Below, one piece after another: positions 92 to 63,246 of a stretch of DNA of 64,000 bases (positions are counted from its first letter, which is position 1; each line of letters begins with the position of its first letter). The translations under genes and the position numbers were made by a program. The DNA is taken from positions 62,001 to 126,000 of IMG/VR virus record IMGVR_UViG_3300032287_004484; one strand, 5' to 3'. A model generated the notes under the pieces. The model was not told the DNA's origin. It saw only the letters and a list, made by a program, of their open reading frames with translations, and ran no database searches.

Positions 92-724
92 TTAATAACT
101 CCATATGACAGCGCTATATTTTGTTCCTTTAACAATTGATTTTGATTCGTGAGGATGTGTGTAATTAGATGGAAAAACTAAAACATCTCCTATTTTTGGA
201 GATATAGAAACATCTTGTCTTGGAAAATAAGTTTCTCCACCAACAAAATCATCATTTAAATAAAATATAAACGATAAAGTTCTTTTTACTTCTAAATTAA
301 ATCCACCATCTATATGTTCTTTATAAAAATCTTCCTCTTGATATTTTAAAACTTGAAATCCTTCATCTCCATTATATTTTATATGAGTTTCTAAATTTTT
401 ATCAAATTCATATTTATAAATTTTCATTAATTGTTCCATACAAACTTTAAATGAATAAGATAAAATTGAGTGAGCTTTAAGAAGTTCAGAATGTGCGCCA
501 AAAATTTGAGTTAAAAATGACACTTGAGTTTTACGATAATTTTCTACTTTTCCAAAAGTTGTTGCTTCATCCCATGAAGCTTTATTCTCTATTGTATCAA
601 TTATAAATTTACAATCATCTTTTTTAATAACATTTTTAAAAACAATAATATCGTCTGTATTTTTATATTTAAATTTAACAGGAGATTCTAACTCATAAAA
701 ATCTTTTACATTAGTAGAATTCAT
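92..724 (-). CDS. 2OG-Fe(II) oxygenase, prolyl-4-hydroxylase-like
   Basis: QVLKY..FYKEHIDG (HxD), LSFIFYLNDDFVGGETYFP, FPSNYTHPH..GTKYS. Confidence 0.9.
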   Translation of the reverse strand: MNSTNVKDFYELESPVKFKYKNTDDIIVFKNVIKKDDCKFIIDTIENKASWDEATTFGKVENYRKTQVSFLTQIFGAHSELLKAHSILSYSFKVCMEQLMKIYKYEFDKNLETHIKYNGDEGFQVLKYQEEDFYKEHIDGGFNLEVKRTLSFIFYLNDDFVGGETYFPRQDVSISPKIGDVLVFPSNYTHPHESKSIVKGTKYSAVIWSY

Positions 725-726
725 AA

Positions 727-1281
727 TTATTCCTCATTAATTGAATTTTTAGATTCAATAATTATATTAGATAAATTATTATATAATTCAAGATATATTT
801 TTTTAGCTTCTTCTAAAGAAAAATATATATATTTTTTAATATCGTTACCTTTAATACAATTTATTTTTATATTTTCAAGACCTAGTGTAATTTGACTTAA
901 AATATTAATTTGATCGTGTAATTCAAAATCTATATAATAAATATCATTATCATTTTGATATAAAAAACTTTTTTTATTATCTTCAAACTGTTTTATTTTT
1001 TTTAAAACTTCAGATTCTTTTTGGTTATTTTTTTCAATATATAAGTTTAAATTTTCTATTGCTTTTTGACGATCATCTAATTTTTTTAATTGAGTATTTA
1101 GAGTTATCTCTCCAGTTTCAAAATTTAAAATTGGAAATTTAACTTCATTGTCTGTTAAAATATATAGACCTAAATAAAGTTTATAATCATTATCATAAAC
1201 ACCTTGAATAAATTTTAACTCCTCTTCTCCATTTTCTCTTTTTATTAAATATACATTATAAGGTTTTTTAATTTCTTTCAT
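727..1281 (-). CDS. putative tail fibre assembly chaperone (DUF4376-like)
   Basis: Directly follows the Gly-rich fibre gene (4-bp overlap); size and C-terminal DQINI...FSLEEAKKI pattern. Confidence 0.45.
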   Translation of the reverse strand: MKEIKKPYNVYLIKRENGEEELKFIQGVYDNDYKLYLGLYILTDNEVKFPILNFETGEITLNTQLKKLDDRQKAIENLNLYIEKNNQKESEVLKKIKQFEDNKKSFLYQNDNDIYYIDFELHDQINILSQITLGLENIKINCIKGNDIKKYIYFSLEEAKKIYLELYNNLSNIIIESKNSINEE

Positions 1282-2756
1282 GGATAAGTTAAAGTTACTT
1301 TAGTTTTAGCTGAAGTTGGACCACTAGCTTCAAATAAAATGTCAGAAAAGAAATTTCCAACTCCAGAAACAGCTGTCCTATTTAGGGTTCCAGATGCACC
1401 ATTAGGTGTACCAGTAGCACCAGTTAAATCAATTCCAGGTACTGATTCTGAACCTGTTGGTGTAAACAACCAAAGACCCCCAGTTTGAGCCCTAGCAAAA
1501 GAAGTACTTCCTCCAGTTAAACCACCTTTACCAGGTCGAATATTTATAGAAGAAGATATTGATCCAGCTACATACATAGATATATGCGCTCCTCCTGTTC
1601 CGCCACCAGCACCACCATTTCCTCCGCTGCCGCCCTGTGAACCATCTGTTGGTAAATCATCGCTAGAAGGTGAATACCAAGTGTTATATCTATTACCATT
1701 ACCACCAGCTCCTCCAGAAGTACCAGCAGCACCAGATGAACCATTACTAGGTGTACCTATGCCAATATAAGATGTAGATAAAATTCCTGCAGATCCTCCA
1801 GAAGTTCCAGTAACGCCCGTAGCCGCTGGACCGCCCGGAGGTATACTTAATGGAGTAGAACCAGAACCAGGGGTTCCAGGACCACCTGCTCCACCACCTC
1901 CACCACTTATCATTATAAGATAATAAATAGATTCTGGTCTTTCATTATAACCACCACCACCTGGATTTCCATTTCCAGATGATCCACCAGAAGTAGCTGT
2001 AGAAGCATAAGCTGACATTCTATATCCGCCACCACCGCCACCAGCTGTTCCTCTACCACCTGGACCACCACTTCCACTAGAGATGCCATATTCTGTTGGC
2101 ATAGATACGGCTGATCCTCCATTTTGATTTGACCAAGTAGAAGGAGAAGCGCCTCCTGGTTCACCAGTACCAGTACCAGGAGTTACATTAAAAGCCATAA
2201 AATATCCATTTCTACCTAATGCTCCACCTGGTCCTCCTACTCCAGCACTTCCACCATTAGTACCATTAGGAGAAGTAATAGTTCCAGAACCAAGAATATT
2301 TCCTCTAACTATAAGCGGTGTTCTAACAAGATTTAAAGTACAACCCGATGCAACAGTTAAATCACCTTTAACTTCTAAAATTGACCATTGTGCTGGTCCA
2401 AAACTAGATGATCTAAAATCAACTGTTGTAGTATGCGAAGGTCCTGTTCCAGTTATTACAAGATTATTAACGATCCCTACATTACCATTTAATGGAAAAG
2501 TATAAGGAGAAGTTAAAGTAATATTATTAAAATCAGTTTTAGAAGCTAAATCATAAGTTATTAAATTTACTTTAACTTTTAAATTACCTGTAGTTTCATC
2601 TACCCAAATAGATCCATCTACAGCATTATCTTGAGGTGGTGTTACAGTTGGTAAAATAACCTGTTGCTTAAAGGAAACAGTTTTATCTATATTAATACCA
2701 GTAGTTGTTTCACTAGCATTTTGTACTTCATTAAAATTTAATTTTGTTAGAGCCAT
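1278..2756 (-). CDS. glycine-rich tail fibre tip/adhesin
   Basis: Long GxGGxGG polyglycine-type repeats as in T-even gp38-type adhesins; N-terminal DGSIWVD fibre motif. Confidence 0.7.
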   Translation of the reverse strand: MALTKLNFNEVQNASETTTGINIDKTVSFKQQVILPTVTPPQDNAVDGSIWVDETTGNLKVKVNLITYDLASKTDFNNITLTSPYTFPLNGNVGIVNNLVITGTGPSHTTTVDFRSSSFGPAQWSILEVKGDLTVASGCTLNLVRTPLIVRGNILGSGTITSPNGTNGGSAGVGGPGGALGRNGYFMAFNVTPGTGTGEPGGASPSTWSNQNGGSAVSMPTEYGISSGSGGPGGRGTAGGGGGGYRMSAYASTATSGGSSGNGNPGGGGYNERPESIYYLIMISGGGGGAGGPGTPGSGSTPLSIPPGGPAATGVTGTSGGSAGILSTSYIGIGTPSNGSSGAAGTSGGAGGNGNRYNTWYSPSSDDLPTDGSQGGSGGNGGAGGGTGGAHISMYVAGSISSSINIRPGKGGLTGGSTSFARAQTGGLWLFTPTGSESVPGIDLTGATGTPNGASGTLNRTAVSGVGNFFSDILFEASGPTSAKTKVTLTYP

Positions 2757-2767: not shown

Positions 2768-5194
2768 TTACTCGATATAAAAACTTTGATTTCCTTGTAA
2801 TTTTGAAACATTATCATCAGTTGCGTATCTTCTTGTTTTTGTTGTGGTTATTGTTGTCCCTAATGCTTCACCATCTTCAGCCCATTCATTAGGTTTTTCT
2901 GTAGTTGTGGTTTCTACATTAATAAAAGCTTTTGTAAAAATACTATAACCATCATTATAACTTTTAGTTAATTCAGAAAAATTTACTGTAAGATCTTTAA
3001 AAACTATTTTAGTAAAAGTGACATCCCCTTCAAATATTATATATAAAGCAGATTCTCTTTTTTTTGGATAAGTGTTTCCAGGTATTTTTTTAAATCTAAC
3101 TGTGGCATCTGAATCCTCTTCTGATGAAATCTCTTCATCAACGTGAATATCTATAAAATAAAAAGCAATTAATTTTTTATCTTTATATTTTATTCCGTAT
3201 GATATTAAATTATTTTTATTTGATATTATACTGTGATTATTTGAATAATTTGAATCTAAATATCCTAAAAATTGATAATCCCATCCCCAACCTTCTTTAG
3301 TTGTTACAATTTTAGGTATTGGAAATATTATCCAAGTCATTATTCCACCTATTAACCATTGAATAGGTATCCATTCTAATTCTTTTCTAGTCCAATTATA
3401 GAAGTATATAAATGCTTGTTTTGACGTTGAATTAATTGTTACATTAAAATATGATCTAAAACTTAAATTAATTGTTACTGTTATACTTCTATCAAAATCG
3501 TTAAATGCAATAATATCTATACTATTTATAGTTACAGTATCAGAATTATTCATTTTACCTGATATTATGCCAGTACTAGGATCTAAAGATAAACCGTTTG
3601 GCAATTGACTTTTTCCTGCAGCATTAGAAATTCTAAAATAAAGTGGTCTAATTACAGTTCCATCATTTATTGTTGGTATTAATTCTACTATTTGATTATC
3701 TCTATCTAAAATAAAATTATTAGGAGTAGAGGTATAATTTGTTTTATTAGTTGTATATTTAAAAGTATTTAATTCTATATTTCCTACTGGAACTTCTATT
3801 TTTATGCTTGATTCTAATTTTTCATTTGTTGAATTATTAGTAGCAGTAATTATTCTTTCTATTGTAGAAATAGTTAACGATGTAATTTTTCCATATACTA
3901 CACCATTTTGAGGATTTAAATTGATTCCATTAGGAAAAGGCGTATTTATAGAATATGTATTATTAACATTAATATTTATATTTGGTTTTACTCCAAAATC
4001 AGCATCTTTATAAAATCTTAATATTTGATTTTGATAATTAAATTCTTTTAAAGGTGTTCTATTAAAATAATATTCTGGTTGTAATAAAGTATCTATACCT
4101 AATGGTTTAGTATTAAAAATATTAGAAGCAGATGCCGTACTTGATGAACACATTATAAAATTTCCGTGTTTTTTATTCCAAATAATTGATGATATTACTT
4201 TACTACTGAAATTACTTCCTATTCTTAATGTCCATGTTTTGCCATTAACTGATGTCATAAAAATATTATTTGCTCCATCAATTGCTATAAATAATTCAAG
4301 TTCTGAACTCCAAGTTATTGCTGTCCAAGTATAAGTATTAATAAAACTTGAAACACCAATATTTGACCAAATTATACCGTTTTCACTATAAATTAATCTT
4401 TGAGAGCCAGCATTTCCAATTAATATAAATAAATTTAATTTTGGAGAATATGCTGAATCTATCCAATCATTAGTTGTACTTTTAACGTCTATAGATGAAT
4501 CACTTGTACAAACTCCCCATGTATTTCCATCGTTATTAGAAAAAAATAATTTAGAAGCAGAATCTGAAACCGCACTTCTAGCGACAACAAGTGTTCCATT
4601 TCCATAAGTAATTGTTTTTAAACTATTAGTTGTTGAAAAAAATTCAAAAGGAGGAGTTTCTATTCTCCAATTTATTCCGTCACGAGATATAATTAATCTT
4701 CTAAAAGCAAATTCTCCAGTGCCAGTATTAGCAACTGCCACAAATAACCCATTAGTTCCACCAGTATATATAACATCTTGCCAATTAACTGATGGTGTTA
4801 CTATGTTTCCTACGCTATTTTTAATAATAACAGATATACTCCAATTAGCTGATAAAATAGGATTATTAGATGTAGAATACATGATATAATTAGTTATGCC
4901 TTCTCCAACTACAACAAAAACTCCATTTCCATATACTATACTTTTCCAAGTATTAGATGTTAAACCAGATATTAAAGTCCAAGAATTTCCACCATCTTTT
5001 GAATAATTTAATATACCTCCATTTCCAACTGCTATAACTAATCCTTCTCCATCTGTTGCTAAACAATTCCATACTGCTGAAGTAGACGTTTGTGCACCCC
5101 AACTATCAGAATAAAATCCAGAAAAGGTTTTTATATTGTTAGAATATAAAGATAAATTTATATTATCTAGGTTTTTATTTAATTTTAATCCCAT
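2768..5194 (-). CDS. fibre/receptor-binding protein 1 (beta-propeller repeats + Ig-like He_PIG-type domains)
   Basis: WxSIxYGNGxFVxV and SxDGxxW repeats; LPNGLSLDPSTGIISG Ig motifs. Confidence 0.7.
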   Translation of the reverse strand: MGLKLNKNLDNINLSLYSNNIKTFSGFYSDSWGAQTSTSAVWNCLATDGEGLVIAVGNGGILNYSKDGGNSWTLISGLTSNTWKSIVYGNGVFVVVGEGITNYIMYSTSNNPILSANWSISVIIKNSVGNIVTPSVNWQDVIYTGGTNGLFVAVANTGTGEFAFRRLIISRDGINWRIETPPFEFFSTTNSLKTITYGNGTLVVARSAVSDSASKLFFSNNDGNTWGVCTSDSSIDVKSTTNDWIDSAYSPKLNLFILIGNAGSQRLIYSENGIIWSNIGVSSFINTYTWTAITWSSELELFIAIDGANNIFMTSVNGKTWTLRIGSNFSSKVISSIIWNKKHGNFIMCSSSTASASNIFNTKPLGIDTLLQPEYYFNRTPLKEFNYQNQILRFYKDADFGVKPNININVNNTYSINTPFPNGINLNPQNGVVYGKITSLTISTIERIITATNNSTNEKLESSIKIEVPVGNIELNTFKYTTNKTNYTSTPNNFILDRDNQIVELIPTINDGTVIRPLYFRISNAAGKSQLPNGLSLDPSTGIISGKMNNSDTVTINSIDIIAFNDFDRSITVTINLSFRSYFNVTINSTSKQAFIYFYNWTRKELEWIPIQWLIGGIMTWIIFPIPKIVTTKEGWGWDYQFLGYLDSNYSNNHSIISNKNNLISYGIKYKDKKLIAFYFIDIHVDEEISSEEDSDATVRFKKIPGNTYPKKRESALYIIFEGDVTFTKIVFKDLTVNFSELTKSYNDGYSIFTKAFINVETTTTEKPNEWAEDGEALGTTITTTKTRRYATDDNVSKLQGNQSFYIE

Positions 5195-5215
5195 ATTATA
5201 TATTTAATTTTTTTT

Positions 5216-8095
5216 TCATTCAATTATGAAAGAAATTGTTTGTGGAACATAAGATGGGGTTCTAGTAGAAAAAAGATCCCATCCATAATCTTCAATAGCT
5301 TCAGATCCAGTTTGAAAAGCGCCGTCGCTAAAAAACCAAGAAAAATATGTATAATAAGTACTTCCATTACCTCCAGACGTTATATAAGAATTTTCATCAT
5401 AAATATATCCTCTTCCAGTAAGAGGATCAAAAGTAGAATCTTTAGTTAGAGTTGCTAAATTGCCTATTGTTATTTTTTTTAATAAACTTTCGTTAAAAAA
5501 AGATGTACCAGAAATCCATAATTTAAAAGTTGGACCATATCCATCACTACTCCAATCATAGTAAAATGCTATAATTGTATGAACTCCAACTGATGTTTTA
5601 TCTAAAGAACCATAATTGCTATTAATATATCCTTCTTGATAATAACTTTGAGAACCGACATTAATCTGTTCTGAGTATCCTGTCGTTAATGTTGCATTAG
5701 AGTATGCTATTCTTATAGAAATATTTTTAGTAGTGATTCCAGCCTGGTTACTTGCTGAAACTGTATAATTTGAAGAACTAGATATATATGGAGTATTTCC
5801 ACTAATTATTCCATTAGAATTATTTATGTTTATACCTGTTGGTAAATCTGGAGAAACAATATAATTAGTTGCGAATCCAACTGACAGTGTTGGTTTATAT
5901 TCTACTTGTGTTCCTGATAATAATAAGCTAGGTATAGTATAATTTAAATCAGAAGGAGGAATAATTATTGGTATTGATGTACTACTTAATTTTCCTGTTA
6001 TGTATAATTCATTATCTTTTTTTGTAAAATATCTTATATTATCATCTAATTCCCAAATAAATTGAGTATAATCATTTTCTTTATTATATATTCTATTAGA
6101 ATTAGATTTTAAAAAAATATAAAACTCAATAGTTATTGATTCCCAATTATCTAAATTATAATCGCCATCAATTGTAAAAAATAATTGTTTTTTGTATGAT
6201 CCAATTCCATTATTAATAATGAAACTTCTTTTTATTGCTAAAGTTAAAATTCCATTATAAATTAATTCTCCTTTAAAATTATAGAAATAATTTTTTTCTA
6301 TTTTTCCACCAGTTATATTTGAATCATTAAAAAAAGAAGATACAAAACCTTCCCATTGTCCATTAAGAGAAATATCTCCTCTAACATCTCCTGTTTGAAT
6401 ACTTGTTTTTAAAATGTATGTAGTAATTCTAATATCTTTAGTTATATTACCTAATGAGTTTGTTGCTTTAATTCTATAAAAAAGTGTTGGTTGTATATTT
6501 TTTGGAGTTCCCTTGATTACTCCAGAATAAGAATTAAATTCTAATCCTTCTGGTAATGATCCTATATTAGATGCTCCTATAACTTCATAACTAAAAGAAT
6601 AATTTGTTCCTTGACTAAGGATTGGATATATATCTAATAAATCTATTAAATCAGTAGCAACAGTGTTGTTAGAATAGGTTAATTCAGATAAAGTTTTAAT
6701 TGAATCAAAAATAGTTATGCTTATTTCACACGTTAAAGTCTGAGTATCATTTTTAGCGTATATATTATAAGTTTTTTTATTTTGAATAGATGTAGCAAGA
6801 CAAATTATTTCACCAGTATTTTGATTTAATGTTACTCCAGTTGGTAATTGATCAAATGTAAAATATTTAAAGCCATAAATTTCACTTATTAGAGGATAAC
6901 TTTTATATGCAACTGATTTAGCTGATATTATATTTGGATTTGTATATTCAAATTTTAATAAATTAGAGGTTTTAATTAAATCATAATAATATTTTTTTTC
7001 TAAAAAATGACTTTGTCCTGAAATTTTTGATGTTAAAATTTTCTCAGCAGCTGATCCAGCTGATCCTATAATTATAAAACTACCAAATTTTCTATTCCAA
7101 GTTCCAGCGATCCAAGATGTTCCGCTATATTGTAAACTTCGAGTTGTCCATATATTAGTTGCAATAGGATTATCTAAATTGTAAGTCGTAAAAGATTTAT
7201 TTGCTCCAGTTCCATTACTTGATATTAAAATCAATATTTCTAATTCTTGACTCCAAATTATTGATTGAAAATTATTAGCGTTTGGTGAAGGAACGTTAGT
7301 CCAAATTTGACCATTGAATGATTTTAAAATTATTCCAGAATTACCAACTGTTAAAAATATTTTTAACTTAGAAATCCATATAACGTTATTAAAAACACCA
7401 TTTATAATATTGTTAGTTGATGATTCTCTAGAAAAAGCTAAAGTCCATTTTTCTGGATTAAAATCAGCATAAGCAATTTTACCTGAGCCATCATTACTTA
7501 TAATTACGAATCTTTTTAAATCTAAACTATAACATATACTTTTCCAAGATACTGAATTTAATTCTATTTGATTAACTATTGTCCAATTAATAGCATCTTG
7601 ACTATACATAATTCTATTAATTCCAGAACTTGCTACTGCTACAAAATAACCATTACCATAAGTGACTGATTCCCAATTATTATTTTGAGGTGAATTATTA
7701 TAATTAAAATTAGCTGTTAAAGTTGGTGTAGCAGATGTAGAATAAAAAGTCCTTGAAACATTAGTGGTTCCAGATGCAGAAATTCCTACGAATTTATTAT
7801 CTCCAAAAGTAATGCCTTTCCAGTTATGATTAGTATTACCTGTAGTATTAAGAGATATACTAATCCATTCTTCTCCACCACTTGATGAGTATGCTAATGT
7901 ACTAGTTCCATTTGTACCTGTAGAACTAATTATCATAAATCCATTACCTTCATTAACAGCAATTGAAGACCAAGATACGTCAGCGACTGATTTATTAGTT
8001 AGTGTATCAAAATAATATCCAGAAAAAGTTTTTATATCGTTATTATATAGAGTTTCATCATCTTCATTTAAAGATACATTTAATTTAATTGGCAT
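5216..8095 (-). CDS. fibre/receptor-binding protein 2 (propeller + Ig domains + duplicated tip domain)
   Basis: Same repeats; three LPxGxxxNxxxGxI Ig motifs; paralogous N-terminus. Confidence 0.7.
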   Translation of the reverse strand: MPIKLNVSLNEDDETLYNNDIKTFSGYYFDTLTNKSVADVSWSSIAVNEGNGFMIISSTGTNGTSTLAYSSSGGEEWISISLNTTGNTNHNWKGITFGDNKFVGISASGTTNVSRTFYSTSATPTLTANFNYNNSPQNNNWESVTYGNGYFVAVASSGINRIMYSQDAINWTIVNQIELNSVSWKSICYSLDLKRFVIISNDGSGKIAYADFNPEKWTLAFSRESSTNNIINGVFNNVIWISKLKIFLTVGNSGIILKSFNGQIWTNVPSPNANNFQSIIWSQELEILILISSNGTGANKSFTTYNLDNPIATNIWTTRSLQYSGTSWIAGTWNRKFGSFIIIGSAGSAAEKILTSKISGQSHFLEKKYYYDLIKTSNLLKFEYTNPNIISAKSVAYKSYPLISEIYGFKYFTFDQLPTGVTLNQNTGEIICLATSIQNKKTYNIYAKNDTQTLTCEISITIFDSIKTLSELTYSNNTVATDLIDLLDIYPILSQGTNYSFSYEVIGASNIGSLPEGLEFNSYSGVIKGTPKNIQPTLFYRIKATNSLGNITKDIRITTYILKTSIQTGDVRGDISLNGQWEGFVSSFFNDSNITGGKIEKNYFYNFKGELIYNGILTLAIKRSFIINNGIGSYKKQLFFTIDGDYNLDNWESITIEFYIFLKSNSNRIYNKENDYTQFIWELDDNIRYFTKKDNELYITGKLSSTSIPIIIPPSDLNYTIPSLLLSGTQVEYKPTLSVGFATNYIVSPDLPTGININNSNGIISGNTPYISSSSNYTVSASNQAGITTKNISIRIAYSNATLTTGYSEQINVGSQSYYQEGYINSNYGSLDKTSVGVHTIIAFYYDWSSDGYGPTFKLWISGTSFFNESLLKKITIGNLATLTKDSTFDPLTGRGYIYDENSYITSGGNGSTYYTYFSWFFSDGAFQTGSEAIEDYGWDLFSTRTPSYVPQTISFIIE
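7634..7697. repeat. 64-bp exact direct repeat, copy 1 (copy 2 at 9758..9821)
   Basis: tactgctacaaaataaccattaccataagtgactgattcccaattattattttgaggtgaatta is identical at both positions. Confidence 0.9.
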
Positions 8096-56201: not shown

Positions 56202-58031
56202 ATGGATGAAGAATTATTTAGAGAACAATATAATAATGATTTAATTGCATCAGAAAAAATGTGCAAAGAAATAGATTATAAATTAAAACAACTTGGTAAT
56301 CTTGCTAATCCTGATGTAAACATGGTTAAAACAGTTGTTAGAGAATGTACTAATATAGAAGAAAAAAGCGCTTTCTTATTTTTCGCACGAGCTTTTGGAT
56401 ATGTTCCGCATCCAACTCGGGGAAAAGTTGCGATGTATGAATCTATGTATAACTGGCAAAAAATAGCAGCTGTTAAGTTTTTAACTGGAACTAGATTTAT
56501 TTCTAAAAAGGTTCGTCAAATTGGTGCTACTACTTTTGTTTCTACTTATTTTCTTTGGAGAGCACTTTTTTATGGAAATACTAACGCTTTTATATTATCT
56601 CTAGGATCAAGAGAATCAACAGACGTTTTAAGTAGAGTTACTTTTATGTATAATGCTTTACCAGCTTGGCTTAAAACTCCTCTGCTTGAAGGTGCAAAAA
56701 CAAGTATAATGTTTAAGAATAATAGTAAAGTAATTGCTCTTCCAGGTACTCCAGATGCTCTTAGAGGTAGATCTTCAACTTCTATTATTTTAGATGAGTT
56801 TGCTTTTTTAAATCACGCTGATAAAATATTATCAGCAGCTGTTCCATCTCTTTCTATGGGGTTTTTAACTCCATTTACAAACTCTTCTCTACCATCTCAA
56901 TTATTTATTATTTCTACTTTTCCATTAGTAGATAGTGATAATAATGAATATGTAAGATTATATAAAAATTCTATATATGGTGATTCAGAGTTTAAAATCT
57001 TATCTGTTTTTACAGATGATGTTCCAGAGTATAGTAATTCTAGTTGGCGTAAAAGTATGCTAGAAACTCTAGGTCCAAAGAAATATGCTGTGGAAATAGA
57101 AGGAAAAATGAACATGACACTTGATAATTCATTTTTCCCAGAACACGTTATTGCTGAATTACAACCAAAACAACCACTTAGAACTGATTTCTTATCTCAA
57201 GATGATGTTGATGAATATGGATTTCCTGTTAATATTGATTCAATAACTAGTGCTAGAGAAAATTATGATCCATCAATTGGATATATTAAAAATTTATGGA
57301 TTTGGGCAGATCCATTACCTAAAAAAGATTATGCAATAACAGTAGACGTTTCTGCTGGTGTTGGTAACGATTATAGTTCTATTCAAATTATTGATTTAGA
57401 AGAACAAAACCAAGTAGGAGAATATTATTCTAATAAAGTATCTTTAGAAGATTTTAAGCATATAATAAGGGATATTGCTTTTTTCTATAATAATGCCAAA
57501 CTATCAATAGAAAGAAATTCTCTAGGTGCACCTCTTTGTTCTTTCTTTTATGAAACTTTAAAATATGAAAATTTTTATATTCATAGAAAAGGTAAAAATT
57601 CTTATATTGAAGGATTTCCTGTAACTAGTGCTAATAGAGGAGCAATATTAGCAACTCTACAAAGTGCTCTAATAAAAAAAGAAATAACTATTAATTCTAT
57701 TAGAACAATTAATGAAATTAGAACTTTCGTTTTTTTACCAAATGGAAGACTTGGCGCTAGTATTGGAAATCACGATGATTTAATTTTAGCTTTAGCACAA
57801 TATGCTTTTTTAAGAGAAGTATTTTTTAATACAGCAACTATGTCTGACTATGGAGAAGATTTTTTAAGAAAAGTTGAAATGGAAGCTGAAAAAATTAAAA
57901 TAAGACACTATATGAATGGTCCTCTTGCTGACGAGGATGATGCAGAAAGAGAATTACAAAATATTATGGCTGGTTATGCGGTTGATCCACATTCTTTAAG
58001 ACAGTGGAAAAACTCAATGAAAGATTTTTAA
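56202..58031 (+). CDS. terL: terminase large subunit (T4 gp17-like)
   Basis: KVRQIGATT Walker A, LRG..IILDEFAF Walker B, VDVSAGVGNDYS, IERN, HDDL. Confidence 0.95.
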   Translation: MDEELFREQYNNDLIASEKMCKEIDYKLKQLGNLANPDVNMVKTVVRECTNIEEKSAFLFFARAFGYVPHPTRGKVAMYESMYNWQKIAAVKFLTGTRFISKKVRQIGATTFVSTYFLWRALFYGNTNAFILSLGSRESTDVLSRVTFMYNALPAWLKTPLLEGAKTSIMFKNNSKVIALPGTPDALRGRSSTSIILDEFAFLNHADKILSAAVPSLSMGFLTPFTNSSLPSQLFIISTFPLVDSDNNEYVRLYKNSIYGDSEFKILSVFTDDVPEYSNSSWRKSMLETLGPKKYAVEIEGKMNMTLDNSFFPEHVIAELQPKQPLRTDFLSQDDVDEYGFPVNIDSITSARENYDPSIGYIKNLWIWADPLPKKDYAITVDVSAGVGNDYSSIQIIDLEEQNQVGEYYSNKVSLEDFKHIIRDIAFFYNNAKLSIERNSLGAPLCSFFYETLKYENFYIHRKGKNSYIEGFPVTSANRGAILATLQSALIKKEITINSIRTINEIRTFVFLPNGRLGASIGNHDDLILALAQYAFLREVFFNTATMSDYGEDFLRKVEMEAEKIKIRHYMNGPLADEDDAERELQNIMAGYAVDPHSLRQWKNSMKDF

Positions 58032-58396: not shown

Positions 58397-58762
58397 TTAA
58401 ATTCCTCGCTCAGAAGAATTTATTATTTTTCCATTACAACTAAAGAAGTTTTCGGTAAATTTTAAGACTAAATTAGGATCATATTCTGCACAAGAAAAAA
58501 CATCTAAATATATTTCTCCAATATTTTCAGCAAAGTGTGCTGTTATAGAACTTGTTTCTATTGCTTGTAATACTGTTATTCCATATAATTTTTCATCATG
58601 AGAAGCAAATTTTTCTATCCATGTATTTCCGTACATTTTCATTTGAATTTCATCACATAATTCTTTAATAAATATTTTAACAGTTTCTGGATCACTTATT
58701 TTTTCTTTATTAGCGCTTTTAAAATCAAAAGCACAAGATAGTCCCCAAGCATTTTTATTCAT
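58397..58762 (-). CDS. SAM-decarboxylase-family pyruvoyl proenzyme, divergent ETS type
   Basis: GITVLQAIETSSITAHF..YLDVFSC..ERG. Confidence 0.85.
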   Translation of the reverse strand: MNKNAWGLSCAFDFKSANKEKISDPETVKIFIKELCDEIQMKMYGNTWIEKFASHDEKLYGITVLQAIETSSITAHFAENIGEIYLDVFSCAEYDPNLVLKFTENFFSCNGKIINSSERGI

Positions 58763-59123
58763 CTAGAGTTCCTCTATTTATTTTAATTATTCTTTTTTCT
58801 TTTGGTTTTAAAACTCTTACTATAAAATCCATTCCTACTTCTGGTTTACAAGTATTTCCACAAGTAAAAATATCAAAATGCCCATAACCAAATTCTGGAT
58901 ATGTATGTACTGAACAATGTGATTCTGATAATATCCAAACTCCAGTTACTCCTTGCGGATCAAATTTATGTTCAACATATTTAAGCGGAGTTGCTCCAGT
59001 TTCAATGGAAGCTAATCTTAATAATTCTTTTATTTTTTCTGGATCATCTAATATATTATTTTGACAATCCCATAAATCAGCTACAATATGTTCTCCATTT
59101 ACAAGGTATTCTTCCTTTTCCAA
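58755..59123 (-). CDS. speD: S-adenosylmethionine decarboxylase proenzyme, canonical ESH type
   Basis: GEHIVADL, HKFDPQGVTG..LSESHCSVHTYPE..DIFTCG; TTG start. Confidence 0.92.
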   Translation of the reverse strand: MEKEEYLVNGEHIVADLWDCQNNILDDPEKIKELLRLASIETGATPLKYVEHKFDPQGVTGVWILSESHCSVHTYPEFGYGHFDIFTCGNTCKPEVGMDFIVRVLKPKEKRIIKINRGTLDE

Positions 59124-59164
59124 TCTTTTTCATTTTCCTCCTAAAAAAAAAGTAAAAGTTTTTT

Positions 59165-59376: not shown

Positions 59377-59916
59377 TTATTTTTTACATTCCTTTTTTAA
59401 AATATTATTATAAGAATTATTCTCTATATCAGATATTTTTAACTGATATTTATTAATAATTTTTATAAAAGATGTAATATATAAACATTTATTAAAAGGT
59501 GGCATCCATTTATCTGGTCCTTTAGAACCTTTAGACCTATTCATTTTAATAGATAAAGGAACTAAATGATTTTCATCTACATAATTATTGGCATAACTAT
59601 TTTTTTGTTTTTTAGTCCATTTATCCGCTCCATGATCATATGCCCATTTTAATGGTACAGTATGATCAATATCTATATCACTTGGATTAGAAAAATATTT
59701 ATCTTCCCAAATAGAATACCATTCGCCACTAAGGATAGTGCAATTTTTAGAATCAAGAGTAATTATATCTCTAGTTTTAATTATTAAAATATGCTCTCTA
59801 GTAGTAATACAGCCTTTATAAGTATTCCAACCTTCTCCAAAAAGATTTCTATCATATTTATCTTGAGAAGATAAATTAGTTAGTATTATAAGAAAAATAA
59901 ATATTATTTTTTTCAT
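59377..59916 (-). CDS. secreted DUF1524/HNH-type nuclease
   Basis: Signal peptide MKKIIFIFLIILTNLSS; DIDHTVPL..A..HGA..W, NRSKGSKGPDKWMPP; ATG at 59916 preferred over the track start at 59934. Confidence 0.85.
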   Translation of the reverse strand: MKKIIFIFLIILTNLSSQDKYDRNLFGEGWNTYKGCITTREHILIIKTRDIITLDSKNCTILSGEWYSIWEDKYFSNPSDIDIDHTVPLKWAYDHGADKWTKKQKNSYANNYVDENHLVPLSIKMNRSKGSKGPDKWMPPFNKCLYITSFIKIINKYQLKISDIENNSYNNILKKECKK

Positions 59917-59924
59917 TTTATGTC

Positions 59925-61133
59925 CTATGTCCATTGTTTTTGTTTAATATTATCGCCATATAATACTTTAGATTCACTAGGCATAGTATTTCCTTCAACA
60001 AAATCTTTACAAAAAGAAACCCAATCATGTGCAGTATTTACAGGAACGTTTTGAAAAACAGCGTTATAATAATCATTTTGTAGATTAAAATCATTTGGTA
60101 AACCCATAAAAATCATGTGTTCTCTTACAGATAAATAGCGATCTTCAGTTGGATGAAGCATATTAGGAGCTCTCATTGTGATTGCATTAAATGGAATTCC
60201 ATCTCGATAAAAATGAGAAGAAGCGTTCCACCAACCTTTTCCAAGAGACATTTTATATTTAGCATACTCAATATGTTTAATGTGTTTTTCATTTTTGATA
60301 GGATCTTCATTTTTTAAAAACTCAATAAAATCATCTTGAAGATTCATTTGAAATAAGAAATACTCAATAGAAACTGATTTTGGTAATTCTTTATATTTTG
60401 CTAACATTTCTGTTCGCCATTCTTTTCCAAATTTCTGAGAACAGTATTTATAGTAATTTGTTTCAGTAAAAATATCTTTTAAAATACATTTTTGGTGTTC
60501 AGGAGTATCTTTATAAGAATTATATTGTTCTTGTAGTATTTCTTTTGGCGACAAATGAGGTTTATTAAACCATTTAAAATTTGGAGCAAATTCTGAATCC
60601 CAAAAGAAAACAAAAGATCTTTTTCTATTTTGAGGTAATCCATGTAAACTAGAAGTTGTAAATACAAAAGAAATACTATATCCATGTTTTTGTCCAATAC
60701 TTATAGCTTGTTCACGAACCCAACTTCCAAAGTTTTGCATTAAACCAGGTGCATTTTCAAAAATCATTACTTTTGGTTTTATATCTCTTAAAACAAGAGA
60801 AGAAGTTAAATACATCCACATATTTGATTTATAATCATGTTCAGCATTAGCTGTTTTATTACTTATAGTTGGATTAAGACGAGATAATCCAGCACAAGGT
60901 GGAACAGCACTTACAATCATAGTATTTTTAAAAATATCGTCATTAAGACCTATAGAATCTAAATTATCATTATCAAGAGTTCTAAACGGAACTCCTTTGA
61001 AATAATTTTTAAAATTTTGTTCATTAGTTGCAAATCCATCCCAAGATACAGCCCAACTAGGATCTTCACCTAAAGCTTTTGTGGCTCCTAAAGCCATACC
61101 ACCAATTAGTGGTATTATTGTTCCATGTTTCAT
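59925..61133 (-). CDS. DNA (cytosine-5) methyltransferase
   Basis: Variant motif I IPLIGG, PPCAGLS, FENAPGL, PQNRKR, RYLSVRE, QNVPV. Confidence 0.9.
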   Translation of the reverse strand: MKHGTIIPLIGGMALGATKALGEDPSWAVSWDGFATNEQNFKNYFKGVPFRTLDNDNLDSIGLNDDIFKNTMIVSAVPPCAGLSRLNPTISNKTANAEHDYKSNMWMYLTSSLVLRDIKPKVMIFENAPGLMQNFGSWVREQAISIGQKHGYSISFVFTTSSLHGLPQNRKRSFVFFWDSEFAPNFKWFNKPHLSPKEILQEQYNSYKDTPEHQKCILKDIFTETNYYKYCSQKFGKEWRTEMLAKYKELPKSVSIEYFLFQMNLQDDFIEFLKNEDPIKNEKHIKHIEYAKYKMSLGKGWWNASSHFYRDGIPFNAITMRAPNMLHPTEDRYLSVREHMIFMGLPNDFNLQNDYYNAVFQNVPVNTAHDWVSFCKDFVEGNTMPSESKVLYGDNIKQKQWT

Positions 61134-61144: not shown

Positions 61145-62254
61145 TTATAAAATTTTAGTTATAGATAATTTTATTTCTTCTTGTGAACATTTTATGTATT
61201 TATCAATTAAATTGTTCAAAAAATTATCATCTATATTTCTATTACTAATTTCAAAAGAATCATCAATTAATAATTTATCTAAATCGCTTTTATCTTTAAT
61301 ACCTTCTTCAACATACACTGAATTATGTATAAATGGTATTACTCCTCTTGTTAGGGCTTCTATAAAGCGAGGAGAAAAAGCATTTTTATCATAACCTGGA
61401 AGTATTAAAGTATATTTAGATTTTTTTAGATATTCAATATATTCTTCTTTAGTAATGTTAGTAAAAATATTTTTATATTTATCTTGTAAAAATATATTAC
61501 TATTTTGTAAAGAATAAAATTTATCGTATAATTTTTGAACATACTTTCTATCTGGAGTTAAACAAGTAAATCCAATACACCAATCATGTTCTTTTTTATT
61601 ATCTAATTCAAGATGTTCTGAGTGATAAATTTTAATAAAAGGATGTTGTTGAGTTTTAAAAAGTTTAGAATCATAAATAAAAAATCTACGATAATCTAAT
61701 TCTTTCACTAAATCTACATCACTATGATTACTTTCTTGTGGATCATGTAAGAAATGATTCCAAGGTATGTTAAAAGTTTTTACAAAACTATAATGATTAA
61801 TAAATTTTTGAGTTGTTTTGCGAGTGCTCATAAAATTAATAAATTTATTTTCTTTAATTCCTTTATTTAAAAAATTAGGTTTATAGTATTTTACTCCACT
61901 GCTCATAATACCAAAAACTTCTACAAAAGACACTGGATCTATTATTCCTTTTAATTTTTGGTATCCTTCCATACATTCAGAAATAAATTTATCCCAAGTT
62001 GTGATTTCTTTTTTTTCATTCATAATGAAACAATCAAAAATACTATTAAGATATTTATCGTGATTTTTAACATGATTAAAGTTTTCAAAATCTGATATAA
62101 GCGCAATATTATATTGATCTTTAAATTTTGTTAACCAATAAGTATAAGTTATATATGAATGTTTTGATGCGTTCCTTAAATTAAAGGGTGCGCCAAAACC
62201 AACTACAATAGTTTTTTTATTTTGATTAAAAGAATTCTTTTTCTCAAATCTCAT
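61145..62254 (-). CDS. GT-B glycosyltransferase, possibly DNA-modifying
   Basis: EYIEYLKKSKYTLILPGYD..FSPRFIEAL..GVIPF C-terminal GT-B motif; next to the MTase. Confidence 0.7.
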   Translation of the reverse strand: MRFEKKNSFNQNKKTIVVGFGAPFNLRNASKHSYITYTYWLTKFKDQYNIALISDFENFNHVKNHDKYLNSIFDCFIMNEKKEITTWDKFISECMEGYQKLKGIIDPVSFVEVFGIMSSGVKYYKPNFLNKGIKENKFINFMSTRKTTQKFINHYSFVKTFNIPWNHFLHDPQESNHSDVDLVKELDYRRFFIYDSKLFKTQQHPFIKIYHSEHLELDNKKEHDWCIGFTCLTPDRKYVQKLYDKFYSLQNSNIFLQDKYKNIFTNITKEEYIEYLKKSKYTLILPGYDKNAFSPRFIEALTRGVIPFIHNSVYVEEGIKDKSDLDKLLIDDSFEISNRNIDDNFLNNLIDKYIKCSQEEIKLSITKIL

Positions 62255-63246
62255 TCTTTATTTTCCTTATTAAATTGTTTTTCAATCCATTTAAAAGTTT
62301 TTTTCATTCCATCTTCTAATTTAGTTGAAGGTTCCCAATTTAATAATTCTTTAATTAAAGTATTATCACTATTACGACTCTTAACACCTTGTGGAGCACT
62401 AACATTATAAATATAAGTTGAATCTATAATATCAGTTTTAGAAATTTTCATTGCTAAATCATGCAAATATTGAATAGTAACTCCTTGACTAGAACCTAAA
62501 TTAACTGGACCTTGAATTTTATTATTTATTAATTTATGTATTCCAACAATTGCATCTTCTATGTACATAAAAGATCTTCGTTGTTTACCATCTCCCCAAA
62601 TTTCAACATGATCTTTTTTCATATTAATATATTCAATAATTTTTCTAATTGAAGCAGCTGGAGCTTTTTCTTTTCCATCTTTCCAAGATCCATGAGGTCC
62701 ATAAACATTATGAAAACGAGCAATCGTAACTGGAACTCCAAATTCTTTATTAAGATAACGATAAAGTTCTTCACAATATAATTTATTTAATCCATACATT
62801 AAATCAGGATGTGCTGGCCACGCATCACTTTCTTTTAACATAATATCTTTAGAATCATCAGTTTGAAGAGAATCGTTATAGACACAAGCAGATGAAGAGA
62901 AAAAAACATGTGGCTTATTCTCACTTTTTAAAATACTTTCTATTAAATTAATATGAATCTTTCCTGATAATCCAGTTAAAAGATGATTATGTTCGCAATA
63001 TCCGATTCCACCCATATCCTCAGCTAGGTTATAAATAATATTAACACCTTGAGTAACTGAGTCAGTAATTTGAGGATTGACCATATCTCCTTTTTTACCA
63101 TGATAATTATCAGCTTCTTTAAATCTTTGATACCATTCATTTTTTGGTTTTTTATCATAAGCTTTAACTTCGTAACCTAAATCTAGACAGCTTTTAACAA
63201 GATGTCCACCTATAAATCCACCTGCTCCGCAAACAGAAACTTTCAT
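62251..63246 (-). CDS. NAD-dependent sugar epimerase, GDP-mannose 3,5-epimerase-like
   Basis: GAGGFIG, LAEDMGGIGY, SSSACVY, YGLNK, RFHNVYGP.G.W..GKEKAPAA, GVKSRNSDNTLI. Confidence 0.88.
   Translation of the reverse strand: MKVSVCGAGGFIGGHLVKSCLDLGYEVKAYDKKPKNEWYQRFKEADNYHGKKGDMVNPQITDSVTQGVNIIYNLAEDMGGIGYCEHNHLLTGLSGKIHINLIESILKSENKPHVFFSSSACVYNDSLQTDDSKDIMLKESDAWPAHPDLMYGLNKLYCEELYRYLNKEFGVPVTIARFHNVYGPHGSWKDGKEKAPAASIRKIIEYINMKKDHVEIWGDGKQRRSFMYIEDAIVGIHKLINNKIQGPVNLGSSQGVTIQYLHDLAMKISKTDIIDSTYIYNVSAPQGVKSRNSDNTLIKELLNWEPSTKLEDGMKKTFKWIEKQFNKENKE

What the first reader, a model, noticed from the sequence alone, without database searches (positions are those of the whole stretch)
58397..59123. 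Two different pyruvoyl decarboxylase proenzymes in tandem
Seen: overlapping genes, one with the canonical SpeD ESH cleavage site and one with a divergent IETSS site. They are too different to be a recent duplication. Established: SpeD homologues, including phage ones, have been neofunctionalised to arginine or ornithine decarboxylases. Inference: the pair could supply both dcSAM and a diamine as a compact polyamine module. It sits between terminase and the DNA-modification genes, suggesting use in DNA packaging or base modification. No spermidine synthase is in the window.
Basis: partly seen in the sequence, partly recalled or inferred. Interest (0 to 1): 0.62.

Follow-up and report, generated by a model that had tools for sequence, protein, structure and literature searches.

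The report
Phage two-decarboxylase polyamine gene pair
A 290-kb freshwater jumbo phage carries two overlapping small genes, an ordinary S-adenosylmethionine decarboxylase and a diverged copy with the signature of the known pyruvoyl ornithine decarboxylases, which together probably feed the host's spermidine synthesis; each part is a known kind, and only the pairing inside phages appears to be undescribed.

Summary
Two minus-strand genes, 58755-59123 (A, 122 aa) and 58397-58762 (B, 121 aa), overlap by 8 nt. Both are class 1b AdoMet_dc proteins and share only 23% identity.

A passes the NCBIfam AdoMetDC equivalog cut-off. It keeps E67|S68-H69, His73, Pro76, Glu77 and Cys88.

B fails that cut-off. 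It keeps Ser71, His76 and Cys91, but its cleavage site is T70|S71. It carries Gln66, Thr70, Phe77 and Tyr85, the four residues that Li et al. 2023 (JBC) give as diagnostic of SpeDC, the pyruvoyl L-ornithine decarboxylases derived from SpeD.

- Both genes are under purifying selection.
- The overlapping pair is kept in at least six related phage contigs, in two different gene neighbourhoods.
- Similar A+B pairs occur in seven other, unrelated IMG/VR contigs.
- The complete phage genome has no spermidine synthase or other polyamine enzyme.

Best reading: a compact module that makes putrescine and dcSAM and relies on a host aminopropyltransferase. The proposed link to terminase or DNA modification is not supported by synteny. 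A heteromer has only weak support.

The module is a new member of a known kind: bacterial speD-speDC clusters and fusions, and single phage SpeD or SpeDC genes.

The parts
58755..59123 (-). speD (gene A): class 1b S-adenosylmethionine decarboxylase proenzyme, 122 aa, TTG start. Predicted self-cleavage is at E67|S68, giving a beta chain of residues 1-67 and an alpha chain of residues 68-122.
   Evidence: - PF02675 at 117 bits.
- TIGR03330 equivalog at 122 bits, against a cut-off of 75.65.
- T. maritima AdoMetDC 1tlu at E=4.6e-26, aligned end to end.
- dN/dS of 0.10-0.24 against close relatives.
58920..58922 (-). Codon of Ser68 of A, the predicted pyruvoyl precursor. It aligns with T. maritima Ser63.
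   Evidence: - Alignment to 1tlu: S68=S63, H73=H68, Y75=W70, P76=P71, E77=E72, C88=C83.
- The codon was read from the sequence.
58397..58762 (-). speDC-like (gene B): diverged class 1b AdoMetDC homologue, 121 aa, ATG start. It is the predicted pyruvoyl-dependent L-ornithine decarboxylase. Predicted self-cleavage is at T70|S71.
   Evidence: - PF02675 at 58.7 bits.
- TIGR03330 at only 26 bits, below the 75.65 cut-off.
- AF2 model with pLDDT 94.4; best PDB matches are T. maritima AdoMetDC at TM 0.82-0.85.
- Q66, T70, S71, H76, Y85 and C91 are invariant, and F77 nearly so, in the family alignment.
- dN/dS of 0.10-0.18 against close relatives.
58550..58555 (-). Codons of Thr70 (58553-58555) and Ser71 (58550-58552) of B, the predicted scissile T|S bond and pyruvoyl precursor.
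   Evidence: - Alignments.
- In the AF2 model residues 69-70 form the turn between strands 61-68 and 71-78.
58755..58762 (-). The 8-nt overlap of the A stop and the B start (ATGAATAA), with GAGG 8 nt upstream of the ATG. This suggests translational coupling.
   Evidence: - Sequence.
- An overlapping stop/start junction is kept in L003, L004, L100, L009 and L103.
59124..59142 (-). Leader of A: GGAGG lies 13 nt upstream of the TTG start, with a conserved out-of-frame ATG at -10 that opens an 18-codon overlapping uORF. An in-frame TGA rules out a longer A.
   Evidence: Conserved in the window, L003, L004 and L100. Its function is unknown and was only noticed, not tested.

Best explanation
The two genes are a translationally coupled, two-decarboxylase polyamine module of a freshwater jumbo phage (290 kb, 25.6% GC).

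**Gene A** is a bona fide pyruvoyl-dependent S-adenosylmethionine decarboxylase (SpeD). The proenzyme cuts itself at E67|S68, Ser68 becomes the pyruvoyl group, and the enzyme turns SAM into decarboxylated SAM, the aminopropyl donor.

**Gene B** is a member of the SpeDC lineage, SpeD homologues that have become pyruvoyl-dependent L-ornithine decarboxylases. It cuts itself at T70|S71 and turns ornithine into putrescine, the aminopropyl acceptor.

**How the module works.** The phage encodes no aminopropyltransferase. During infection the pair would therefore push both substrates into the host's spermidine synthase and raise spermidine, which phage translation, replication and DNA condensation need. 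The phage brings the two committing decarboxylations as two PLP-independent genes of about 370 bp each, and leaves the transferase to the host.

**Shown.**
- Family membership and fold.
- Catalytic and diagnostic residues.
- Purifying selection on both genes.
- Conservation and recurrence of the pair.
- Absence of SpeE in the phage.

**Inferred.**
- The substrates.
- Self-cleavage.
- Dependence on a host SpeE.
- The benefit to the phage.
For: **A is canonical.**
- It scores above the NCBIfam AdoMetDC equivalog cut-off.
- It matches T. maritima AdoMetDC at E=4.6e-26 and keeps Ser, His and Cys plus the aromatic, Pro and Glu positions.
- That Pro is the residue Li et al. say separates true AdoMetDC from the ADC derivatives (PMC10407285).

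**B has the SpeDC signature.**
- It has the class 1b fold and keeps Ser, His and Cys.
- The positions aligned to T. maritima W70, P71 and E72 are replaced by A, E and N.
- It carries Gln66, Thr70, Phe77 and Tyr85, in the order Q..T-S..H-F..Y..C. Li et al. name these four residues as diagnostic of SpeDC ornithine decarboxylases.
- They are invariant or nearly so across the B family.
- B is 43% identical to a Ca. Kaiserbacteria protein (OGG49987/OGG75700) with the same motif. A Kaiserbacteria homologue (OGG79367) is a validated ODC.

**Tree.**
- B and six phage kin form a 99%-supported clade.
- That clade is nested in a 97%-supported clade of 89 rows with bacterial ETS-type proteins.
- These include genes lying between speD and speE (Aminicenantes L061, L038) or after a SpeD-SpeE fusion (SAR324 L018, L043). 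This is the same context as the validated Atribacteria, Anaerolinea and Sumerlaeota speD1-speD2-speE clusters.
- The phage AdoMetDC of phiN3 (D|S-H site) and the ADC of HTVC201P (no Phe or Tyr) fall outside that clade.

**The pair is selected as a pair.**
- dN/dS is about 0.1-0.24 for both genes.
- The overlapping A-then-B arrangement is kept in L003, L004, L100, L101, L009-L011 and L103, across two different neighbourhoods.
- Of the 80 best IMG/VR contigs with a B-type gene, seven unrelated ones also carry an A-type gene within 3 kb, in either order and always with the same motif split.
- One of these (L106) adds speE.

**Nothing else in the phage.** The complete phage has no SpeE, DHS, CASDH/HSS, arginase/agmatinase or PLP Orn/Arg decarboxylase.

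**Precedent.** Single phage SpeD and SpeDC enzymes have been validated biochemically (PMC9992855).
Against: - No enzyme assay, and no evidence of self-cleavage.
- The validated SpeDC sequences could not be fetched by accession. Clade membership with them is therefore indirect, and the positions of the four diagnostic residues were inferred from the paper's text, since its figure is not held.
- The best hit of B among cultured phages is the phiN3 protein (30.5% identity, E=2e-11). This is a true AdoMetDC even though it lacks the W, P and E positions, so loss of those residues does not prove loss of SAM activity.
- One characterised phage homologue (UCP01) acts on both Arg and Orn.
- About 55 of the 80 closest bacterial homologues of B lie in an uncharacterised operon with a GNAT, an ATP-grasp enzyme and a PLP decarboxylase. 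Part of the clade may use another substrate.
- The host is unknown, so a host aminopropyltransferase is assumed rather than shown.
Confidence: 0.64

Rival explanations
1. B is an L-arginine decarboxylase (SpeDA type) that makes agmatine. The pair would then feed an agmatine-based route, such as host SpeB/AguAB or an N1-aminopropylagmatine pathway.
For: - Pelagiphage HTVC201P ADC shares the Gln and the T|S site with B.
- UCP01 decarboxylates both Arg and Orn.
- The tandem pair of phage MaAM05 combines a canonical SpeD with an ES-H, Pro-less (ADC-like) copy, next to speE and speB.
- B lacks the Pro that marks true AdoMetDC.
Against: - B has Phe77 and Tyr85, which HTVC201P lacks.
- HTVC201P and MaAM05 speH_1 fall outside the 97%-supported clade that holds B.
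- The phage has no agmatinase or arginase-fold protein.
- All validated proteins with the four-residue signature were ornithine-specific.
Confidence: 0.1
2. B still decarboxylates SAM, so the phage carries two divergent AdoMetDC isozymes.
For: - Sinorhizobium phage phiN3 SpeD is the closest cultured-phage relative of B.
- It also lacks the W, P and E positions.
- Yet it complements E. coli delta-speD and sits in the otherwise ODC clade in the published tree.
Against: - phiN3 keeps an acidic residue before the serine and a His after it (D|S-H), as true AdoMetDCs do. B has T|S-S.
- phiN3 lies outside the 97%-supported clade that holds B.
- A redundant second AdoMetDC would not explain the long-term retention, under purifying selection, of a strictly A+B pair in many unrelated phages.
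- B scores 26 bits against the AdoMetDC equivalog cut-off of 75.65.
Confidence: 0.07
3. B is not a free-standing ODC. It could be an obligate partner of A, forming a heterodimer with shared or regulated active sites, like a split SpeD-SpeDC fusion or a prozyme-type activator. Or it could act on a different, unknown amino-acid-like substrate.
For: - The two genes overlap and are probably translationally coupled.
- Natural SpeD-SpeDC fusion proteins exist.
- Class 1b enzymes are dimers (my own knowledge of Toms et al. 2004, not checked here).
- The complex prediction for A+B gave weak support: ipSAE 0.44 against a best control of 0.01, partner pLDDT at least 78, and runs agreeing in at least 76% of contacts. 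By the tool's calibration, 51 of 78 solved complexes and 2 of 108 mismatched pairs reach the mark. At scores of 0.60 or under, however, only 5 of those solved complexes pass, while all 4 mismatches that passed scored in that range.
- Most close bacterial homologues of B lie in an uncharacterised GNAT/ATP-grasp/PLP-decarboxylase operon.
Against: - Seventy of the 80 sampled viral contigs, and most bacterial loci, carry a B-type gene with no A-type neighbour. B-type proteins therefore work alone.
- Validated SpeDCs are active as single purified proteins.
- Ser, His and Cys are invariant in B, which argues against a dead regulatory subunit.
- The complex score may only reflect memory of solved AdoMetDC homodimers, and it cannot tell a hetero- from a homodimer.
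Confidence: 0.12
4. The products serve DNA packaging or a polyamine-type DNA base modification, as the first reader suggested from the terminase and DNA-methylase neighbours.
For: - In the window the pair lies between the large terminase (56202-58031) and a divergent C5-methylase, a GT-like protein and a nucleotide-sugar epimerase.
- The same neighbours are seen in L100.
- The genome holds a divergent thymidylate-synthase homologue that could in principle be a hydroxymethylase.
- Phage PhiW-14 attaches putrescine to thymine (PMC5977210).
Against: - In the sister lineage the pair is not next to the terminase or a C5-methylase.
- Unrelated phages carry the pair in yet other contexts.
- PhiW-14 itself encodes no ornithine decarboxylase.
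- The thymidylate-synthase homologue is about 70 kb away and matches only PHROG families named thymidylate synthase.
- Free polyamines in capsids are a general benefit, not a specific link to the terminase.
Confidence: 0.05

Closest known systems
Bacterial and archaeal speD1-speD2(-speE) clusters: SpeD plus SpeDC in Ca. Atribacteria, Anaerolinea thermophila, Ca. Sumerlaeota and Methanospirillum hungatei (Li et al. 2023, JBC, PMC10407285)
   Same: - A canonical AdoMetDC sits next to a diverged homologue with the Gln/Thr/Phe/Tyr signature.
- The A-then-B order with overlapping ends is also seen here in the Aminicenantes loci L061 and L038.
   Different: - The bacterial clusters include speE. The phage has none anywhere in its 290 kb.
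- The carrier here is a virus.
SpeD-SpeDC fusion proteins of Desulfotignum phosphitoxidans and Ca. Omnitrophica OLB16 (same paper)
   Same: The same two activities are coupled in the same order: SpeD first, SpeDC second.
   Different: - Here there are two separate polypeptides from overlapping genes, not one chain with two pyruvoyl sites.
- Physical association is unproven; the prediction gave only weak support.
Single phage-encoded SpeD (S-PM2, phiYS40, P2559S, phiN3), SpeDC (Lake Baikal phage, UCP01-04) and SpeDA (HTVC201P) (Li et al. 2023, PNAS, PMC9992855)
   Same: - Small class 1b pyruvoyl decarboxylases carried as auxiliary metabolic genes, many in freshwater phages.
- They rely on host enzymes for the remaining steps.
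   Different: - Those phages are described with one homologue each, or with SpeD plus SpeE. No phage with SpeD plus SpeDC together is mentioned in either paper.
- Here both sit in one overlapping pair.
Microcystis phage MaAM05 (MW495066) cluster speH_2-speH_1-speE-speB
   Same: A jumbo phage (274 kb) with two adjacent SpeD homologues, one canonical and one diverged.
   Different: - In MaAM05 the diverged copy has an E|S-H site without Pro, Phe or Tyr (ADC-like). It is accompanied by speE and agmatinase, which makes a complete arginine-based route.
- The window's B is ODC-like, and the phage brings no downstream enzymes.
Trypanosomatid AdoMetDC-prozyme heterodimer (PMC5201418)
   Same: Two diverged AdoMetDC paralogues that could act together.
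   Different: - That system is a class 2 eukaryotic enzyme with a catalytically dead partner.
- B keeps Ser, His and Cys, and its relatives work alone.

Membership tests
Class 1b AdoMetDC fold / Pfam PF02675 (both genes) | Significant match to the family profile, and the alpha-beta sandwich fold of the small prokaryotic enzyme | tested here: met
   - A scores 117 bits and B 58.7 bits, against a cut-off of 25.
- The AF2 model of B has pLDDT 94.4 and matches 1tmi/1vr7 at TM 0.82-0.85 and rmsd 1.9 A.
Class 1b AdoMetDC fold / Pfam PF02675 (both genes) | Self-processing and catalytic residues equivalent to T. maritima Ser63, His68 and Cys83 | tested here: met
   - A: S68, H73, C88.
- B: S71, H76, C91, invariant in the family.
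- Actual cleavage cannot be tested here.
Bona fide AdoMetDC (SpeD; NCBIfam TIGR03330 equivalog): gene A | Score above the equivalog cut-off, an acidic residue before the Ser and a His after it (E|S-H), and a conserved Pro after the His-x-aromatic | tested here: met
   - 122 bits against a cut-off of 75.65.
- The motif is ILSE|SHCSVHTYPE.
- The Pro criterion comes from PMC10407285.
Bona fide AdoMetDC (SpeD; NCBIfam TIGR03330 equivalog): gene B | The same criteria as for gene A | tested here: not met
   - 26 bits against a cut-off of 75.65.
- The site is T|S-S.
- The W/Y, Pro and Glu positions are replaced by A, E and N.
SpeDC (pyruvoyl-dependent L-ornithine decarboxylase derived from SpeD): gene B | Four diagnostic residues, Gln, Thr, Phe and Tyr, in the conserved central region (Li et al. 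2023, Fig. 8) | tested here: met
   - Q66, T70, F77 and Y85 occur in the order Q..T-S..H-F..Y..C.
- Q66, T70 and Y85 are invariant, and F77 nearly invariant, in 15 diverse relatives; all four positions are invariant in 10 bacterial and archaeal relatives.
- Caveat: the positions were inferred from the paper's text, because the figure is not held.
SpeDC (pyruvoyl-dependent L-ornithine decarboxylase derived from SpeD): gene B | Falls in the single clade that holds the biochemically validated SpeDCs | tested here: inconclusive
   - The validated sequences could not be fetched by accession.
- Indirect support: B is nested at 97% support with bacterial homologues that lie in speD-x-speE clusters.
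- B is 43% identical to a Kaiserbacteria protein from the same MAG series as the validated OGG79367.
SpeDC (pyruvoyl-dependent L-ornithine decarboxylase derived from SpeD): gene B | Decarboxylates L-ornithine but not SAM, Arg or Lys | not testable with these tools
   This needs the purified protein and a CO2-release or LC-MS assay.
SpeDA (pyruvoyl-dependent L-arginine decarboxylase derived from SpeD): gene B | AdoMetDC-like central region that lacks the conserved Pro, usually with an agmatine-using partner (speB or aguA/aguB) | tested here: not met
   - The Pro is absent, but the central region is SpeDC-like rather than AdoMetDC-like.
- The phage has no arginase/agmatinase-fold gene.
- aguA and aguB were not searched for.
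Complete virus-encoded spermidine pathway (SpeD plus SpeE gene pair, PMC9992855 Fig. 3) | A spermidine synthase / aminopropyltransferase (PF01564) encoded by the virus | tested here: not met
   - The only hit in G000 scores 15.3 bits, below the cut-off. It is a generic Methyltransf_11 protein.
- An HMM built here from three SpeE sequences finds nothing in G000 at E<=10, but does find the speE of L106.

The most novel reading that the evidence does not exclude
A and B assemble into a heterodimer whose two active sites lie at the A-B interface. This would be a natural 'split' form of the SpeD-SpeDC fusion proteins, and so a living model of the intermediate that Li et al. propose on the way to the eukaryotic class 2 AdoMetDC. 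Putrescine made at one site could then directly control or feed dcSAM production at the other. The evidence does not exclude this: the genes overlap, fusions exist elsewhere, and the complex prediction gave weak support (0.44 against a best control of 0.01). Against it, B-type genes mostly occur without an A-type partner. A still bolder reading, that the products are built into phage DNA, has no positive evidence.
Probability: 0.13. Interest if true: 0.6.

Novelty: new member of a known kind. Interest (0 to 1): 0.36.

Why it matters
**What it adds.**
- If the assignment holds, this phage lineage carries both committing decarboxylases of spermidine synthesis as two tiny PLP-independent genes and borrows only the host transferase.
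- That extends the published list of single phage polyamine genes to a coupled two-step module.
- The same pairing has arisen or been kept in several unrelated phages, and one viral contig holds the whole ornithine-to-spermidine set.

**What it offers for experiments.**
- It is a simple test case for why large phages top up polyamines.
- It could also show whether paired class 1b enzymes can heterodimerise.

**Limits.** It is not a new kind of enzyme or pathway. The same pairing is established in bacteria, and both enzyme types have been validated in phages.

Tried and rejected
- **B alone against PDB sequences.** phmmer gave only spurious weak hits. A profile of the family was needed to reach AdoMetDC structures.
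- **Paper supplements.** The supplements of both key papers hold no sequences, so motifs could not be checked against the validated proteins.
- **Cluster look-ups.** They gave no accession for the phage-type relatives. They yielded only a Kaiserbacteria proxy (OGG49987/OGG75700), not the validated OGG79367.
- **Weak Spermine_synth hit in the phage.** The hit (15.3 bits) was followed up and rejected: it is a generic Methyltransf_11 protein beside a nucleotidyltransferase.
- **Weak deoxyhypusine-synthase hit.** The hit (11.1 bits) is a 394-aa protein with no Pfam family, beside the prohead protease.
- **Promoter and terminator scan.** Around the pair it found fewer promoter-like sites than shuffled sequence and no terminators, so it was uninformative.
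- **tRNAs.** None in the window and two in the genome, so there is no host clue. The host remains unknown. The habitat is freshwater or lake, judged from the run labels, and most of those runs hold only a small share of the stretch.
- **Orthology of the A genes.** The A genes of the two phage sub-lineages are only 37% identical, while their B genes are 65% identical. Whether they are orthologous could not be settled, because the A tree gives an unresolved three-way split.
- **Complex prediction.** It gave only weak support and cannot separate a hetero- from a homodimer. It is not used as evidence of binding.
Full report
**1. What is there**

The window is bases 62001-126000 of a 290,274-bp IMG/VR virus record with direct terminal repeats, rated complete. 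It has 25.6% GC and two tRNAs. DNA matching the region is found in metagenome runs whose labelled members are freshwater and lake-water samples, most of them holding only a small share of the stretch.

On the minus strand lie two ORFs:
- 58755-59123: gene A, 122 aa, TTG start.
- 58397-58762: gene B, 121 aa, ATG start.

The ATG of B lies inside the last codons of A, giving an 8-nt overlap (ATGAATAA). GAGG sits 8 nt upstream of that ATG.

Both proteins match Pfam AdoMet_dc, A at E=4.7e-34 and B at E=8.4e-16. Both also match PHROG 3125. They are the only two such genes in the genome. They are 23% identical.

**2. Gene A is a canonical AdoMetDC**

- A exceeds the NCBIfam equivalog cut-off for AdoMetDC: TIGR03330, 122 bits against 75.65.
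- It aligns end to end with Thermotoga maritima AdoMetDC (1tlu, E=4.6e-26).
- The alignment maps E67|S68 onto the E62|S63 cleavage site, H73 onto H68, and C88 onto C83.
- It also maps Y75, P76 and E77 onto W70, P71 and E72.
- Li et al. 2023 (PMC10407285) name S63, H68 and C83 as the processing and catalytic residues. They name that proline as the residue that separates true AdoMetDC from its arginine-decarboxylase derivatives.

**3. Gene B is a diverged homologue with the SpeDC signature**

- B scores only 26 bits on the AdoMetDC equivalog.
- An AlphaFold2 model built on 15 relatives is confident (pLDDT 94.4). Its best PDB matches are T. maritima AdoMetDC at TM 0.82-0.85 and 18% identity. A profile of the B family reaches only AdoMetDC structures, so no closer solved relative exists.
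- All alignments put the pyruvoyl serine at S71. The site is therefore T70|S71, with H76 and C91 conserved.
- The positions aligned to T. maritima W70, P71 and E72 are A, E and N in B.
- Li et al. state that the SpeDC group, the pyruvoyl L-ornithine decarboxylases derived from SpeD, is recognised by four residues in this central region: Gln, Thr, Phe and Tyr.
- B has Q66, T70, F77 and Y85, in the order Q..T-S..H-F..Y..C. Q66, T70 and Y85 are invariant, and F77 nearly so, across 15 diverse relatives. All four positions are invariant across 10 bacterial and archaeal relatives.
- I could not see the paper's figure, so the positions are inferred from its text.

**4. Comparison with characterised enzymes**

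- Sinorhizobium phage phiN3 SpeD is a true AdoMetDC that sits in the ODC-like clade. It has Q..D|S-H..H-F..Y.
- Pelagiphage HTVC201P is an arginine decarboxylase. It has Q..T|S-H..H-S and no Tyr.
- In a tree of 109 proteins, B and six phage kin form a 99%-supported clade. That clade is nested in a 97%-supported clade of 89 rows with bacterial ETS-type proteins. phiN3, HTVC201P and the diverged copy of phage MaAM05 lie outside it.
- The 89-row clade includes genes that sit between speD and speE in Aminicenantes (L061, L038). It also includes genes that sit right after a SpeD-SpeE fusion in SAR324 (L018, L043). This is the same context as the validated speD1-speD2-speE clusters.
- B is 43% identical to a Ca. 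Kaiserbacteria protein (OGG49987/OGG75700) with the same motif. A Kaiserbacteria homologue, OGG79367, is a validated ODC.
- The validated sequences themselves could not be retrieved, so clade membership with them stays indirect.

**5. The pair is kept as a pair**

- Close relatives of B (65-98% identity) are common in metagenomes, and so are relatives of A.
- The overlapping A-then-B arrangement is present in L003, L004, L100, L101, L009-L011 and L103.
- In one sub-lineage (the window, L100) the neighbours are a C5 DNA methylase upstream and the large terminase downstream.
- In the other sub-lineage (L009, L103) they are methyltransferases and a GT34 glycosyltransferase upstream, with a 5'-3' exonuclease and baseplate genes downstream.
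- The pair therefore travels as a unit.
- Nei-Gojobori dN/dS among close relatives is 0.10-0.24 for A and 0.10-0.18 for B. Both are under purifying selection.
- Between the two sub-lineages, B is 65% identical but A only 37%. Whether A was replaced or simply evolves faster is unresolved.

**6. The pairing recurs in unrelated phages**

- IMG/VR holds at least 584 contigs with a B-type gene.
- In the best 80, 70 carry B alone.
- Seven unrelated contigs also carry an A-type gene within 3 kb: L117, L124, L169 and L183 in A-B order, L149 and L168 in B-A order, and L106 divergently.
- In every case the A-type gene has the E|S-H/Y ... H-x-W-P/Q-E motif and the B-type gene has Q-L-I-E-T|S ... H-F ... 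Y.
- L106 also encodes a spermidine synthase next to its SpeD. It thus holds a full ornithine-to-spermidine set.
- GenBank phage MaAM05 (274 kb) has speH_2-speH_1-speE-speB. There the diverged copy looks ADC-like and is matched by an agmatinase.
- Neither key paper, nor the searchable literature, describes a phage with SpeD and SpeDC together.

**7. What the phage lacks**

The complete genome has none of the following:
- Spermidine synthase. The one weak hit is a generic methyltransferase, and an HMM built here also finds nothing.
- Deoxyhypusine or homospermidine synthase. The weak hit is an unrelated protein beside the prohead protease.
- Saccharopine-dehydrogenase-type CASDH/HSS.
- Arginase or agmatinase.
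- A PLP Orn/Arg decarboxylase.

**8. Mechanism proposed**

- A makes decarboxylated SAM and B makes putrescine.
- A host aminopropyltransferase joins the two into spermidine.
- The phage thus brings the two committing, pyruvoyl-dependent and PLP-independent decarboxylations in about 730 bp, and leaves the transferase to the host. Many cyanophages with speD alone are thought to do the same.
- Family, fold, residues, selection, recurrence and the missing SpeE are shown. Substrates, self-cleavage, host dependence and the benefit to the phage are inferred.

**9. Rivals**

- B could be an arginine decarboxylase.
- B could be a second AdoMetDC, like the phiN3 enzyme.
- B could be a partner or regulator of A, or could act on another substrate.
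- The products could serve DNA modification.
- A prediction of the A+B complex gave weak support only: 0.44 against a best control of 0.01, partner pLDDT at least 78, and contact agreement at least 76%. It may only reflect solved AdoMetDC homodimers.
- The DNA-modification idea rests on neighbours that are not conserved. PhiW-14, the putrescinyl-thymine phage, itself encodes no ODC.

**10. A caution on the B clade**

About 55 of the 80 closest bacterial homologues of B lie in a conserved, uncharacterised operon. Its order is B-type gene, FemAB-like GNAT, ATP-grasp enzyme, LysA/FslC-like PLP decarboxylase, with a sigma-54 activator upstream. Their substrate has not been tested, so part of the clade may do something other than supply putrescine for spermidine.

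**11. Verdict**

- The 'compact polyamine module' reading is supported by comparative evidence.
- The packaging and base-modification link is not supported.
- This is a new member of a known kind, of moderate interest.

Noticed in passing
L016-L095 (GTDB genome loci), e.g. L054:3929-4354 followed by 4355-5320; representative genes L034:5316-6626 and L091:3845-5164: In about 55 of the 80 closest bacterial homologues of B, the gene heads a conserved operon. Its order is B-type SpeD homologue, Acetyltransf_6 (FemAB-like GNAT), ATP-grasp enzyme, then a LysA/FslC-like PLP decarboxylase. A sigma-54 activator often lies divergently upstream. No NCBIfam equivalog covers any member. It may make a putrescine- or ornithine-based conjugate.
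   Followed up: partly
L018:2646-3998 and L043:2709-4001: SAR324 and related MAGs encode a 430-450 aa fusion of an AdoMetDC domain with a complete spermidine synthase (PF02675 + PF17284 + PF01564). A B-type gene follows it immediately, with a 1-4-nt overlap of stop and start.
   Followed up: partly
L098 (Microcystis phage MaAM05, MW495066: 246315-249093): This deposited jumbo phage carries speH_2 (canonical SpeD), speH_1 (E|S-H site, no Pro, ADC-like), speE and speB in a row. That is an apparently complete arginine-to-spermidine route, and the searchable literature does not discuss it.
   Followed up: partly
L106 (IMGVR_UViG_3300033153_004080): 267-953 (-), 944-1354 (-), 2977-3345 (+): This 32.6-kb viral contig holds a spermidine synthase, a canonical SpeD and a B-type SpeDC-like gene within 3.1 kb, a full ornithine-to-spermidine set.
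   Followed up: partly
L006:1246-1608 and L006:5001-5354: This phage contig of about 100 kb has two B-type genes 3.4 kb apart and no A-type gene. They lie among two radical-SAM genes.
   Followed up: no
window 59124-59142 (minus strand), and the same place in L003, L004 and L100: Gene A starts with TTG or GTG in all relatives, 12-13 nt after GGAGG. In the window's sub-lineage a conserved out-of-frame ATG sits 10 nt upstream of that start and opens an 11-18 codon overlapping uORF. This might tune or regulate translation of A. It recalls the uORF control of eukaryotic AdoMetDC, but nothing was tested.
   Followed up: partly
window 59925-61133 (-), 61145-62254 (-), 62251-63246 (-); G000:C1:50771-51391: Upstream of the pair in the same transcription direction lie a divergent C5 cytosine methylase (46.9 bits against a dcm cut-off of 100.65), a weak GT47-like protein and a nucleotide-sugar epimerase. 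Elsewhere in the genome is a thymidylate-synthase homologue far below the ThyA equivalog cut-offs. Together they hint at DNA or glycan modification unrelated to the pair.
   Followed up: partly
window 59377-59934 (-): This 185-aa protein has a hydrophobic N-terminal signal-like segment and a GmrSD_C / HNH-type nuclease domain (PF07510, 24.9 bits). It overlaps the end of the methylase gene.
   Followed up: no
L009:4639-5004 and L103:3639-4004 compared with window 58755-59123: Between the two phage sub-lineages the A genes are only 36-40% identical, while the adjacent B genes are 65-68% identical. Either A evolves much faster or it was replaced in place. The tree leaves this open.
   Followed up: partly
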